A stretch of DNA of 64,000 nt from contig NW_024055733.1 in assembly GCF_902713615.1 (NCBI RefSeq), positions 1,612,001 to 1,676,000 on the forward strand, read 5' to 3'. Below, piece after piece: positions 8,247 to 32,497 of the stretch. Position 1 is the first letter of the stretch; the number at the start of each line of letters is the position of its first letter. The position numbers and the translations under genes are program-made. The notes beneath the pieces were generated by a model. That model was not told the origin of the DNA and ran no database searches. It was given only the letters and a program-made list of their open reading frames with translations. Source of the stretch: Scyliorhinus canicula (taxonomy: Eukaryota).

Positions 8247-8824
8247 ACTTGTGTTGTCATGCTGCCGTTCTCTATGTTGTTGTGAACAAGAGTCCCTCTG
8301 CAATTTTCAGACAATATGCTTTTATGTTGTTAAGATTATTTGCAAAGGGTTTAGAACTTTTTGTCTTTTCTTTCGGTTCACCGAGGGGGCATTTTTGGTT
8401 GAGTAGTTCAATGTCGGTCACAATGTCCGAAGCTGCAATAGCTTCCCGAACGGATGTACCAACCCACCGCAATTCCGAGAGGGCAGCCGAGTTAAAACAG
8501 ACTGTTCCCGAGCCGTGGTTACGAGAGCCTCTGGGCCCCCGAGTGTCCGTCACGAGACCGCTGAAGCATCCGCTCCAGCTTGTCAGGTTTCCTGCAGGGG
8601 CTGCAGCGCCTGCTGCAGTTGTGAAATACATGTCAACGTGTTTCCTGCTCAGGAGAAACCGCTGCTGGTGACCTTAGTCCGCCTTTCCTCATCTCAATCT
8701 GCACAAAATTACGCCATGGCTAACAGCAGATGGGGCGTGGTTACATCAAACGGGGGTTGGTCTAGTTGTCTGAGTGAGTGAGTGAGTTAAGTTAAGTTAA
8801 GTTAAGTTAAGTTGAGGTGGGTGA

Positions 8825-8914
8825 GAGTGTAAAAACAAATGTGCAATATGAAGCTGAGCGTCCCCATTTGTCACATTCTGCTCAGCTTCATATTGCACAT
8901 TTGTTTTTACACTC
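8825..8914. other. Perfect 35-bp inverted repeat with 20-nt loop (hairpin copy 1 of the composite repeat)
   Basis: gagtgtaaaaacaaatgtgcaatatgaagctgagc (8825-8859) pairs with gctcagcttcatattgcacatttgtttttacactc (8880-8914). Confidence 0.95.
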
Positions 8915-8924
8915 ACTGTTCAAT

Positions 8925-29200: not shown

Positions 29201-30580
29201 TGGTCATGGGTTTGTGGGCCGAGTCTAAGGGCTGTGGGCGTGTTTTGGGGGATGTGGGCGTGGTCATGGGGTTGTGGGCGTGTTTTAGGAGTTGTGGGCG
29301 TGGTCTACTAGTTTTGGGCGTTGTCTACTAGTTGTGGGCCTGGTCTCTGGGTTTTGGTCGTGGTCTAGGGGCTATTGGCGTGGTCCATGGGTTGTGGGCG
29401 TCGTCTGGGTGTTGTGGGCGTTGTCATGAGATTGTGGGCGTGGTCTAGGGGCTATGGGCGTGGTCTTTGGGATGTGGGCGCGGTCATGGTGTTGGGGGCG
29501 TGGTTTAGTAGCTGTGGGCGTGGTCTACTAGTTTTGGGCGTGGTCTACTAGTCGTGGGCGTGGTCTGAGTTTTTGGGCGTGGTCTAGGGGTTGTGGGCGT
29601 GGTCTAGGTGCGGTGGGCGTTGTCTACGGGCTGTGGGGGTGGTCTAGGGGTTGTGGGCGCGGTCTAGGTGTTGTGGGCGTGGTCATGGGGTTATGGGCGT
29701 GGTTTATGATTTGTGGGCGTGGTCTACAGGCAGTGGGCGTGGTCTAGATGTTGTGGGCGTGGTATCAGACGATGGGGCGTGGTTTCAGCAGACGGGACGT
29801 GGTCTTGCAATCTGAGTGAGTGAGTGACTGAGTTGAGTAGAGTTGAGTTAAGTTCAGTTAAGTTGAGGTGGGTGAGTGAGTGTAAAAACAAATGTGCAAT
29901 ATGAAGCTGAGCATCCCTAGTTGCCACATTCTGCTCATCTTCATATTGCAGACTTCTTTATACACTCACTGTTTAATGCATTGATCTCTGTTCATCCTGA
30001 CCATGTTACACATCCCAGTCAGCCTGTTCCACACATTGATCACTGTTCATCCCAGTCAGCCTGTTCCACACATTGATTCCTGTTCATCCTCAGCATGTTA
30101 CACATCCCAGCCAGTCTGTTCCAGACATTGATCCCTGTTTATCCTGAGCCATGCTACACATCCCAGTAAGCCTCTTCCACACATTGATCCCTGATCATCC
30201 TGACCATGTTACACATCACAGTCAGCTTGTTCCACACATTGATTCCTGTTCATCCTCAGCATGTTACACATCCCAGTCAGCCTGTTCCACACATTGACCT
30301 CTGCTCATCCTGACCATGATACACATCCCAGTCTGCCTGTCCCACACATTGATCCATGTTCATTCCAGTCAGCCTGTTCCACATATTGATCCCTGTTCAT
30401 CCTCAGCATGTTACACATCCCAGTCTGTCTGTTCCACACATTGATCCCTGATCATCCTGACCATGTTACACATCCCAGTCAGTCTGTTCCACACATTGAT
30501 CCCTGATCATCCTGACCATGTTACACATCACAATCAGCCTGTTCCACACATCGATCCCTGTTCGTTCTCATCATGGGGCT
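26292..30580. repeat. Tandem multimer of the composite unit: 55/37-bp minisatellite, ctcatcatggggctgt linker, 20-bp GC-box array, (GAGT)n(GAGTT)n, hairpin
   Basis: Minisatellite 26292-27480, 27820-28525, 29980-30565; GC-box arrays 27485-27650, 28530-29810; hairpins ~27718-27811 and ~29876-29969. Confidence 0.9.
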
Positions 30581-32497
30581 GTTAAGATAAGGTGGGTGAG
30601 TGAGTGTAAACTGTGAACAGTGCCCGAGAGTAAAGAATGTTTATGTAATCCGTACACTGCTGCAAACAATGTATATCAGAACAGTGCCCTGCAGTAAACA
30701 GTGTCAATGAAACGTCCCGCAACTGTAAACTAGTCTATGTAAACAGGACCCTGCAGTAAACAGTGTCAACGTAAACCGTGCTCTGCTGCAAACTGTGAAC
30801 AGTGCCCGAAAGTAAAGAATGTTCATGTAAACCGAACACTGCTGTACACAGAGACTACGTAAACAGCGACCTTCATTAAACAGTTTTACATCAACCGTTA
30901 TCTACTTTAAACAGAGTCTATATAAAAGTTTCCCACAGTAAACACCATTGAAACAGTGCACTACAGTAAACAGTCCTTGTAAACACGGCACTACAGAAAA
31001 GAGTGCTACTTAAAACCGTGCACTACAGCAAACAGAGGATAGGTAAATAGAGCCCTACAGTAAACAGCAAGTCTGTCAACAGTATGTCAACTGTACACGA
31101 CTGTGAATAGTCTATTTCAACGGTGACCTACTGTAAACAGAGCATATGTAGAATGTACACGGCTGTAAATAGTCTATGTAAACAGTTCCTTACAGTAAAT
31201 GTAGTGAAAGTAAACCATATACTACTGTAAACAGTCTATGTAAGTGTCCTACAGTAAATAAAATTTTAGCTGTGCCCAATAGTGAACAGATACTATGTAA
31301 ACCGTGCCCGACAGTAAGCAGAGTGAAAGTGTACATAAACATAATCGATTTAAAAAGTGCCTCACAGTAAACAGTTATTATGTAAACTGTACATTGCTAC
31401 AAACAGAGGCATTGTAAAAAAGTGTGCTACTGTAAACAATGTTTATGTAAACCGTGCACTACTGTAAATCATCTGGGTAAAGGTGCTCTGCAGTAAACAT
31501 AGTTTATTGAAACGGTGCCCGAAATTAAACAGTATATTTAAACCGGAAATTGCTGTAAACAGTCGATGTAAACAGTGCCGTACAGGAAACAGTACTCATG
31601 TAAACTGTACGCTACTGTCAACAGAGTTTGTTTAAATAGTGCCCGACAGTAAATAGTGTTAATTTCAACATTATACTGCTGGAAGTAGTCCATGTAAACA
31701 GTGTCCGACAGTAATCAGTGTGATTGCAAACCGTAAACGCTGTACATCGTGTATATAAACAGTTCCCGACAGTAAACAGTGTTTCTGTAAACAGTACACC
31801 GCTGTATACAGTCTACGTAAACTGTGCCCTAAAGTAAATGGTGCTAATGAAAACCGTACACTGCTCTAAACAGAGTCGATGTACAGATAGCACGAAATAA
31901 AACTAGTTTTATGTAAAGGGTCTGCTGATGTAAACAGTGCCCTATTGTAAACAGTGTTTATGCAAACCTTACACTTTGTAAACCGTATATGTAAATCGCG
32001 TCCTCAAGTAAACTGTGTTATGTAAATCCTGCACTACTGTAAACGGAGTCTGTATATATGTAGCACTATAGTAAACTGTACTTATGTAAATTGCACACTG
32101 CTATAAACAGAGAATATGTAAACTGTGCCCTTCGGTAAACAGTGTTTATGTAAACCATACATGCTGTAACCAGTCTATGTAAACAGTGCCACTCAGTAAA
32201 CAGACGCAAAGTAAAACGTACACTATAGTAAACAGAGTATATGTAAAAAATGCCCGACAGCAAACAGTATTTACACAGTGCCCTATAGTAAACAGAATCT
32301 ATGTAAACAACGCCCTGCAGTCAACAATGTTTATTTAAACCGCACCCTGGTGGAAACAGAGTTGATGTTAGCAGTGCCCGACAGTAAATTGAGTGAAAGT
32401 GAGCGTACTCTCCTGAAAACACTGTCTATGGAAACAGTGCCCTACAGTAAACCATGTTAATGAAAATCGTACCCTACTGTAAACAGAGTCCATGTAT

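What the first reader, a model, noticed from the sequence alone, without database searches (positions are those of the whole stretch)
8723..30610. Modular composite repeat (GC-box array, microsatellite, long hairpin, minisatellite) in dispersed and tandem copies
Seen: the fixed order [GGGCGTGGTC 20-mer]n > cagcagatggggcgtgg > (GAGT)n(GAGTT/AAGTT)n > gaggtgggtg > 35-bp-arm hairpin > [55/37-mer]n > ctcatcatggggctgt linker. It occurs once at 8723-10275 and head-to-tail about 2.5 times at 26292-30580. Array lengths vary widely between copies (GC array ~0.17 vs ~1.3 kb) while the junctions are conserved. Known: non-autonomous Helitron/Helentron elements (DINE-1/HINE) combine inverted repeats, a microsatellite and internal tandem repeats, and form tandem multimers. 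Inference: possibly an undescribed shark mobile or macrosatellite unit that seeds minisatellites. Alternatively the hairpin is a captured Tc1-like MITE (right arm rc CAGTGAGTGTAAAAA) or a small-RNA precursor.
Basis: partly seen in the sequence, partly recalled or inferred. Interest (0 to 1): 0.7.

Follow-up and report, generated by a model that had tools for sequence, protein, structure and literature searches.

The report
Composite satellite unit with palindrome
A non-coding repeat unit built from four smaller repeats in a fixed order is real and is copied as a whole about a hundred times in one sequenced individual, but it looks like an ordinary lineage-specific composite satellite and not a proven new jumping gene.

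Summary
The fixed order is 20-mer G-rich array, then (GAGT/GAGTT/AAGTT)n microsatellite, then a 90-bp palindrome, then a 55/37-mer minisatellite, then back to the 20-mer array. It occurs once at 8724-10275 and as partial + 2 full + stub units at 26292-30610.

The "linker" and the "cagcagatgg" junction are conserved array-edge variants, not separate modules.

Public DNA contigs of the same species show:
- The 20-mer is a very abundant satellite, with summed depth 10^3-10^5 against about 5-13 for locus-specific contigs.
- In one run the hairpin junction (depth 1011) and the 55/37-to-20-mer junction (depth 1091) are equally amplified, about 100-fold. So the whole unit, not the hairpin alone, is multi-copy.
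- A second species holds the 20-mer and the 55/37-mer.
- One poly(A) RNA run gave no reads on the composite.

The two loci have unique flanks and four different breakpoints. They have no TSD, no terminal repeats and no Rep/Hel or transposase ORF nearby, and the hairpin reaches no Rfam family threshold.

Best reading (0.55): a lineage-specific composite satellite, amplified as a unit by DNA-level duplication, whose inner arrays expand and contract.

Interest is modest.

The parts
8724..8771 (+). Locus 1: last two 'CAGCAG'-type 20-mer units (second one degenerate) plus a short spacer. This is the left breakpoint of the solo copy.
   Evidence: It differs from the T2 counterpart at 6 of 48 positions. 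No homology extends further left.
8772..8813 (+). Locus 1 microsatellite (GAGT)3(GAGTT)(AAGTT)n
8814..8824 (+). Locus 1 conserved G-rich spacer GAGGTGGGTG(A)
8825..8914 (.). Locus 1 palindrome: perfect 35-bp arms and a 20-nt loop
   Evidence: pair I2, 100% complementary; -40.2 kcal/mol, z -12.4; Rfam matches only below gathering score
8915..10275 (+). Locus 1 55/37-mer minisatellite: 28 anchors, mixed 55- and 37-bp units, ending inside a unit with no linker
26292..27478 (+). Locus 2, T1: 55/37-mer array, 5'-truncated, abutting a high-copy interspersed repeat. It shares a 12-unit 37/55 spacing pattern with the locus 1 array.
   Evidence: 87.7% identity over 1.1 kb in register with locus 1; the interspersed repeat ends at 26290
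27479..27494 (+). Junction ('linker') from 55-mer to 20-mer array, CTCATCATGGGGCTGT
   Evidence: 3 exact copies: 27479, 28525, 30567
27495..27653 (+). T2 20-mer array, 8 units, core GGGCGTGGT; collinear with unit 1 and the last units of the long array
27654..27706 (+). T2 microsatellite
27707..27811 (.). T2 spacer GAGGTGGGTG plus hairpin (38-nt arms, 89% complementary, 27718-27811)
   Evidence: pair I3; -30.7 kcal/mol, z -7.0
27812..28524 (+). T2 55/37-mer array
28525..28540 (+). Junction ('linker'), second copy. A variant of it stands at depth about 1091 in run X3.
   Evidence: (position 28530 C>T)
28541..29813 (+). T3 20-mer array, about 61-63 units. The 11-nt core TGGGCGTGGTC is conserved and the spacer is variable. 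CpG observed/expected is 0.95.
   Evidence: very high depth in DNA runs
29814..29864 (+). T3 microsatellite (interrupted)
29865..29970 (.). T3 spacer plus hairpin (39-nt arms, 87% complementary, 29875-29970)
   Evidence: pair I4; a 189-nt X3 contig of depth 1011 spans 29841-30017
29971..30566 (+). T3 55/37-mer array; its distal 580 bp is 89.6% identical in register to T2
30567..30610 (+). Stub of a further unit: the linker, then a remnant of the microsatellite end, GGTGGGTG, and the first 13 nt of the left arm. There is no 20-mer array. It joins the neighbouring 32-mer satellite across a shared GTAAA.

Best explanation
This is a lineage-specific composite satellite, a macrosatellite-like higher-order unit. 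Four non-coding sub-repeats are locked in one circular order: a G-rich 20-mer array, a (GAGT/GAGTT/AAGTT)n microsatellite, a 90-bp palindrome, a 55/37-mer minisatellite, and back to the 20-mer array.

Shown:
- The unit is copied as a whole.
- After copying, the interiors of its arrays expand and contract while their edge units stay fixed.
- The same junctions are amplified about 100-fold in one sequenced individual.

Inferred:
- Amplification is by tandem duplication and unequal exchange between the internal arrays.
- The two loci in this window are fragments of such arrays. They were placed here by DNA-level copying, such as break repair with template switching or re-integration of circular array fragments, and not by a transposase acting on fixed ends.
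- The palindrome and its G/T-rich left flank are the likely seed from which the adjoining microsatellite and minisatellite grew.

No RNA or protein product is indicated.
For: 1. Fixed order and conserved junctions in all copies.
2. Array edges are conserved while interiors vary. T2's 8 units of the 20-mer match unit 1 and units 55-61 of the 61-unit array. The first 55-mer after the hairpin carries the same edge variant in all three copies. T2 and T3 arrays are 89.6% identical in register. Locus 1 and T1 arrays are 87.7% identical and share a 12-unit 37/55 pattern.
3. In X3 contigs the hairpin junction (189 nt, depth 1011; covers the microsatellite end, the hairpin and the first 55-mer) and the linker junction (depth 1091) are equally abundant. 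Locus-specific contigs stand at 8-13. Every cleanly measurable junction of the circle is therefore about equally amplified, as expected for head-to-tail units.
4. The two loci have four different breakpoints. Their flanks are unique in the window and show no homology beyond the ends. There is no TSD and no TIR. One end joins the next satellite at a 5-nt microhomology.
5. No transposase or Rep/Hel domain was found in any of the 19 ORFs of 120 aa or more that were scanned.
6. [quoted passage not shown]
Against: - The ~100-fold figure rests on two contigs of one run (X3). Run X1 of the same species shows only about 65 at the hairpin, although it shows ten times more 20-mer.
- Contig depth cannot tell tandem copies from dispersed copies.
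- Two separate loci with unique flanks 16 kb apart show that pieces do move.
- The left end of locus 1 coincides exactly with the start of the distinctive CAGCAG units, which a fixed 5' terminus would also explain.
- Rolling-circle transposons also form head-to-tail multimers with truncated copies.
- No genome-wide search was possible.
Confidence: 0.55

Rival explanations
1. It is a non-autonomous mobile element that carries satellites, analogous to Helentron-associated HINE/DINE-1 or the bivalve DTC84/pearl elements. It would spread by rolling-circle or cut-and-paste transposition, form head-to-tail multimers, and seed the 20-mer and 55/37-mer satellites.
For: - It combines a microsatellite, tandem repeats and a palindrome, and forms multimers with a truncated end copy, as in HINEs and DTC84.
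- The core-repeat variants are ordered and keep fixed positions whatever the copy number, as described for DTC84.
- About 100 near-identical junction copies exist in X3.
- Two loci have unique flanks.
- Locus 1 starts exactly at the CAGCAG unit.
- AA stands at three of the four boundaries; DTC84 has a putative AA duplication.
Against: - The palindrome is 90 bp long and lies between the microsatellite and the array, not at the 3' end.
- No subterminal inverted repeats could be placed.
- The four breakpoints share no terminus, and none lies between two T's.
- All junctions of the circular order that could be measured are equally abundant, which leaves no obvious place for termini.
- No Rep/Hel ORF is in the window.
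Confidence: 0.22
2. The palindrome is a relic of a short MITE or foldback element (for example Tc1-like). It landed once in a G/T-rich sequence, and replication slippage around it gave rise to the flanking microsatellite and minisatellite. The unit was later amplified as a satellite. This is an account of origin and is compatible with the best explanation.
For: - Inverted repeat arms of 35-39 bp make up nearly all of the 90 bp.
- The arrays abut both arms without a spacer.
- The outer part of the left arm is itself GAGT-like, and the first 55-mer overlaps the end of the right arm.
- MITE- and foldback-derived satellites are documented (reference list seen).
Against: - There is no TA or other duplication flanking the arms.
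- The hairpin never occurs without its neighbours in the window.
- The abundant X3 contig also carries both neighbours.
- No related transposase was found.
Confidence: 0.1
3. It is a functional locus. Either the stem is a small-RNA (endo-siRNA or miRNA-like) precursor, or the 20-mer array is a CpG-island-like array of zinc-finger (KLF/Sp-type GGGCGTGG) binding sites.
For: - The stem is very stable.
- The 11-nt core is kept in 50-60 of 60 units while the spacer varies freely.
- CpG observed/expected is 0.95 in the 20-mer array, against 0.17 in the 55/37 array and 0.56 in the whole window.
Against: - Rfam matches fall below gathering score, occur on both strands and include plant families. T2 and T3 fail altogether.
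- Changes in the arms are not compensated, and the arms are not significantly better conserved than the loop and flanks (p = 0.12-0.77).
- One oligo-dT RNA run gave 0 reads on the composite.
- Motif identity with KLF/Sp sites is recalled from memory, not tested.
Confidence: 0.08

Closest known systems
Composite repeats of complete human assemblies (e.g. the TELO-composite with its ajax/teucer sub-arrays; Hoyt et al., 10.1101/2021.07.12.451456)
   Same: The repeating unit is made of three or more different repeats. It occurs in tandem and at several loci. An internal sub-array (49-bp ajax) varies in length, and the sub-elements evolve together as one super-repeat.
   Different: The sequences and the lineage are unrelated. 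No TE-derived subunit was recognised here. The unit here contains a 90-bp palindrome and a microsatellite. The genome-wide distribution is unknown.
HINE / DINE-1 (non-autonomous Helentrons), e.g. Cg_HINE of the Pacific oyster (PMC7492417)
   Same: A microsatellite next to an array of satellite-like repeats, a palindrome, head-to-tail multimers, and a link between dispersed short arrays and abundant satellites.
   Different: HINEs have 11-12-bp subterminal inverted repeats, a short palindrome at the 3' end after the array, and T-rich (TT) insertion sites without duplication. None of these could be shown here, and the palindrome is in a different place.
DTC84 / pearl tandem-repeat-containing MITEs of bivalves (PMC3879986)
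   Same: [quoted passage not shown] Core-repeat variants sit in an ordered, fixed-position array whatever the copy number. Palindromes are proposed as hotspots of length change.
   Different: DTC84 has at most five core repeats of one kind, flanks with short inverted repeats and a conserved AA at the termini. Here there are two different arrays of up to about 60 units and no defined termini.
Classical G-rich minisatellites with a conserved core (Jeffreys-type; recalled from general knowledge)
   Same: The 20-mer has a conserved G-rich core and a variable remainder, and it is highly variable in length.
   Different: Here it is one module of a larger unit, is a very abundant satellite, and keeps its CpG.

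Membership tests
Composite repeat (sensu Hoyt et al.) | [quoted passage not shown] | tested here: met
   The unit holds a 20-mer array, a microsatellite and a 55/37-mer array, plus a palindrome. Definition read.
Composite repeat (sensu Hoyt et al.) | The unit recurs as a whole, in tandem and/or at several loci | tested here: met
   There are 2 full units, 2 partial units and a solo copy in the window. Two junction contigs are equally amplified, about 100-fold, in X3.
HINE / non-autonomous Helentron | 5' subterminal inverted repeat with a nearby complementary IR, matched by a 3' subterminal inverted repeat | tested here: inconclusive
   No termini could be defined. The only non-array sequence in the unit is the palindrome, an 11-nt spacer and the junction variants.
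HINE / non-autonomous Helentron | Short palindrome at the 3' end, after the tandem-repeat array | tested here: not met
   The palindrome is 90 bp long and lies between the microsatellite and the 55/37 array, with arrays on both sides.
HINE / non-autonomous Helentron | Microsatellite in the left module next to a central tandem-repeat array | tested here: met
HINE / non-autonomous Helentron | Insertion into a T-rich (TT) site without duplication, with the same termini in all copies | tested here: not met
   The boundaries are AA|CA, TC|TG, CT|AA and AA|CT. The four breakpoints fall at different points of the unit. Only two loci were available.
HINE / non-autonomous Helentron | Autonomous partner encoding Rep/helicase with shared ends | not testable with these tools
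   There is none in the window among the 19 ORFs of 120 aa or more that were scanned. The rest of the genome could not be searched.
Tc1/mariner-type MITE (hairpin alone) | Terminal inverted repeats flanked by a TA duplication, and copies inserted independently at unrelated sites | tested here: not met
   The arms are flanked by ..GGTG / GTT.. with no TA. All three hairpins have the same neighbours. Genome-wide solitary copies were not testable.
Known miRNA precursor family (Rfam 15) | Score at or above the family's gathering threshold | tested here: not met
   There were 0 hits at gathering score in the whole window. The best match is mir-556 at 54 bits against 84 required, on both strands and alongside plant MIR families. 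T2 and T3 fail.

The most novel reading that the evidence does not exclude
The unit is an undescribed vertebrate (elasmobranch) satellite-carrying mobile element built around a 90-bp palindrome. It would be a functional analogue of HINE/DTC84 that is recently active (about 100 near-identical copies) and is the source of a very abundant CpG-retaining 20-mer satellite whose conserved 11-nt core is a protein-binding site.
Probability: 0.18. Interest if true: 0.55.

Novelty: new member of a known kind. Interest (0 to 1): 0.3.

Why it matters
If the best reading holds, this is a tidy vertebrate example of several satellites locked into one co-amplified unit. Array edges stay fixed while interiors change, which is useful for repeat annotation of cartilaginous-fish genomes and as a likely copy-number-variable marker. 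It changes no general view.

It would matter more in two cases. The first is if genome-wide mapping showed defined termini and empty sites, making it a satellite-seeding transposon in a vertebrate. The second is if the CpG-rich 20-mer arrays with their conserved core proved to be unmethylated binding-site arrays sitting between genes.

Tried and rejected
- **External copies.** Exact-pattern scans of the metagenome collection (hairpin arm; 55-mer core) and of the viral collection (three phased 20-mer cores) found nothing. These collections are not expected to hold this genome, so the blanks mean little.
- **Earlier scan notes.** Searches by place, by words and by sequence gave no other sighting of this unit.
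- **Insertion test at 26290.** The high-copy repeat left of the tandem block continues differently in other copies (loose ends). Its continuation is absent from the window, even allowing 7 errors. So no clean insertion with a duplication can be shown. Weak RT similarity on the minus strand at 24157-24528 suggests the neighbour may be a 5'-truncated LINE.
- **Extending homology beyond the four boundaries.** Scores were at shuffle level.
- **Constraint on the stem.** Arms against loop and flanks gave p = 0.12-0.77. Left arm against right arm gave p = 0.054 at best. Neither is significant, and there are no compensatory changes.
- **Known miRNA.** Rejected.
- **Larger segmental duplication carrying GPCR genes.** Rejected. 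The flanks are unique and the gene orientations differ.
- **Kinship of the hairpin or of the neighbouring 28-, 32- and 35-mer satellites with each other.** Not significant.
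Full report
**1. Observation**

Locus 1 (8724-10275) holds:
- two terminal 'CAGCAG'-type 20-mer units, the second degenerate;
- the microsatellite at 8772-8813;
- GAGGTGGGTG;
- a perfect palindrome at 8825-8914 with 35-bp arms and a 20-nt loop. Its DNA fold is -40.2 kcal/mol, z = -12.4;
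- a 1.36-kb array of 55- and 37-bp units.

Locus 2 (26292-30610) reads, in order:
- 55/37 array (T1), junction, 8 x 20-mer, microsatellite, hairpin, 55/37 array (T2);
- junction, about 61-63 x 20-mer, microsatellite, hairpin, 55/37 array (T3);
- junction and a stub.

The stub skips the 20-mer array and nearly all of the microsatellite. It stops 13 nt into the left arm, where a different 32-mer satellite begins across a shared GTAAA.

The hairpin arm occurs 5 times against 0 expected in shuffles. The 37-mer core occurs 75 times, and only inside the four arrays.

**2. Refinement of the anatomy**

The 'linker' is not a module. It is a 55-mer cut after CATG in its 18-bp insert and joined directly to the first 20-mer unit.

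'cagcagatggggcgtgg' belongs to the last two, variant, units of the 20-mer array.

The 55-mer equals the 37-mer plus 18 bp lying between two CATCC direct repeats. I counted 49 units of 55 bp and 23 of 37 bp. They are uniformly 94-96% conserved.

The 20-mer behaves differently. In 60 units of the long array the core TGGGCGTGGTC is kept in 50-60 units per position, while the 9-nt spacer varies freely. The CpG is lost to TG or CA in only 3 units. CpG observed/expected is 0.95-0.97 in the 20-mer arrays, against 0.17 in the 55/37 array and 0.56 in the window.

**3. The unit is copied as a whole, and arrays change in their interiors**

- T2's eight 20-mer units match unit 1 and units 55-61 of the long array.
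- The first 55-mer after the hairpin carries the same edge variant in all three copies.
- The distal 580 bp of the T2 and T3 arrays align in register at 89.6% identity.
- The locus 1 and T1 arrays align at 87.7% over 1.1 kb and share a 12-unit 37/55 spacing pattern.
- Non-array segments differ by 7% between T2 and T3, and by 12-16% between locus 1 and T2 or T3.

**4. Beyond the window**

The runs were two DNA runs of the same species (X1, X3), one DNA run of another species (X19) and one oligo-dT RNA run (X22). Contigs that look locus-specific, with few differences, have depth about 5-9 in X1 and about 8-13 in X3.

- **20-mer array.** Summed depth is 2x10^4 to 1.5x10^5 in X1 and 10^3 to 2.6x10^4 in X3, from thousands of variant contigs. 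It is a very abundant genome-wide satellite.
- **Hairpin junction.** In X3 one 189-nt contig of depth 1011 spans 29841-30017, covering the microsatellite end, spacer, hairpin and first 55-mer. From the listed differences it has the T2/T3-type loop, a right arm closer to locus 1, and a 7-bp duplication in the left arm.
- **Linker junction.** One contig across it (28530 C>T) has depth 1091.
- **What the two contigs mean.** The two once-per-unit landmarks are both amplified about 100-fold and in a 1:1 ratio. So the whole unit, not the hairpin alone, is multi-copy.
- **Run X1.** It does not show these abundant contigs (about 65 at the hairpin), yet it has about ten times more 20-mer. This difference between runs or individuals is unexplained.
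- **Run X19.** It holds short contigs of the 55/37-mer (1-3 differences in 85 nt) and of the 20-mer. Both satellites therefore exist in a second species.
- **Run X22.** It gave 212 reads, all on the neighbouring interspersed repeat and none on the composite.

**5. Is it a transposon?**

- The flanks of both loci are unique in the window.
- Homology stops sharply at all four ends.
- The four ends fall at four different points of the circular unit: in the last 20-mer units, at two different phases of the 55/37 unit, and in the left hairpin arm.
- There is no duplication and there are no terminal inverted repeats.
- None of the 19 ORFs of 120 aa or more that I scanned has a Rep, helicase or transposase domain. 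The Pfam matches among them are three rhodopsin-type GPCRs and a weak RT remnant.

Measured against the HINE definition (5' subTIR plus IR and a microsatellite in the left module, a central array, a 3' subTIR plus short palindrome, TT target; PMC7492417), only the microsatellite-plus-array feature is met. The palindrome is in the wrong place and is much longer.

Because the hairpin junctions and the linker junction are equally abundant, termini could lie only inside an array or at the 20-mer-to-microsatellite border. One point in favour of a fixed end is that locus 1 starts exactly at the first CAGCAG unit.

DTC84 of clams (PMC3879986) is the nearest transposon analogue. It has ordered core-repeat variants with fixed positions, a microsatellite at one end of the array, palindromes as hotspots, and AA at its termini.

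**6. Is the hairpin an RNA gene?**

Rfam gave nothing at gathering thresholds in the whole window. With permissive thresholds the perfect hairpin matches mir-556 (54 bits against 84 required) on both strands. It also matches several plant MIR families, which is the signature of a generic long stem. The T2 and T3 hairpins fail. Substitutions in the arms are uncompensated, and the arms are not significantly better conserved than the loop and flanks.

**7. Reading**

The best-supported explanation is a lineage-specific composite satellite in the sense of the composite repeats of complete human assemblies (definition read). It is amplified unit by unit through DNA-level duplication and unequal exchange. 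Its inner arrays grow and shrink independently, and fragments are occasionally copied to new sites by break repair or circular intermediates. The copying mechanism is inferred, not shown. A satellite-carrying non-autonomous transposon remains possible at about 0.2. A MITE origin of the palindrome is compatible with either reading.

**8. Limits**

No genome-wide search of this species was possible. The metagenome and viral collections gave nothing, as expected, and earlier scan notes held no second sighting. I verified only that the window carries vertebrate-type genes (a GPR84-like receptor).

Noticed in passing
window 2891-4267 (-), 20693-21598 (+), 60403-61134 (-): Three intronless rhodopsin-family GPCR ORFs. 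The first is a clear GPR84 relative (E = 1e-102 to solved GPR84 structures). The second has no solved relative at E <= 1e-10. The composite repeat loci lie between these genes, so this is a genic region, not classical heterochromatin.
   Followed up: partly
window 26000-26290 (and leftwards to about 23600): A very high-copy interspersed repeat: summed contig depth about 1e5, also present in the second species, and read on both strands in poly(A) RNA. It ends at 26290, exactly where the tandem block starts, whereas other copies continue with different sequence. There is weak RT similarity on the minus strand at 24157-24528, so it may be a 5'-truncated LINE.
   Followed up: partly
window 28541-29813 and 27495-27653: The 20-mer arrays keep their CpG (observed/expected 0.95-0.97, GC 59-61%) and an 11-nt core, while spacers drift. 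The adjoining 55/37 arrays are CpG-depleted (0.17). This could reflect germline hypomethylation or protein binding. Neither was tested.
   Followed up: partly
Read laying on window 26000-30800, runs X1 and X3: Two DNA data sets of the same species differ about 10-fold in 20-mer depth (X1 higher) and about 15-fold the other way at the hairpin and linker junctions (X3 higher). The cause could be library bias, copy-number polymorphism or sex linkage. It is unexplained.
   Followed up: no
window 53057-53200: A second, unrelated hairpin with 55-nt arms (89% complementary, 34-nt loop). It lies inside the stretch that another first-stage note calls an endogenous retrovirus, and it looks like a MITE-type inverted repeat.
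   Followed up: no
window 4436-7938, 30608-41327, 55542-56040, 62427-63998, 58629-59628: The window is crowded with other satellites: a 28-mer array, a 32/64-mer array that directly abuts the composite block, two arrays of one 35-mer, and 17-mer G-rich arrays. Some share a short motif (AACAGT(G)CCCT, TGCCCT), but this is not significant against shuffles (p about 0.07-0.09).
   Followed up: partly
window 30583-30610: The last partial unit goes from the linker straight to the end of the microsatellite and the start of the left arm, with no 20-mer array. This is either a deletion or a picture of the unit before the arrays expanded.
   Followed up: no
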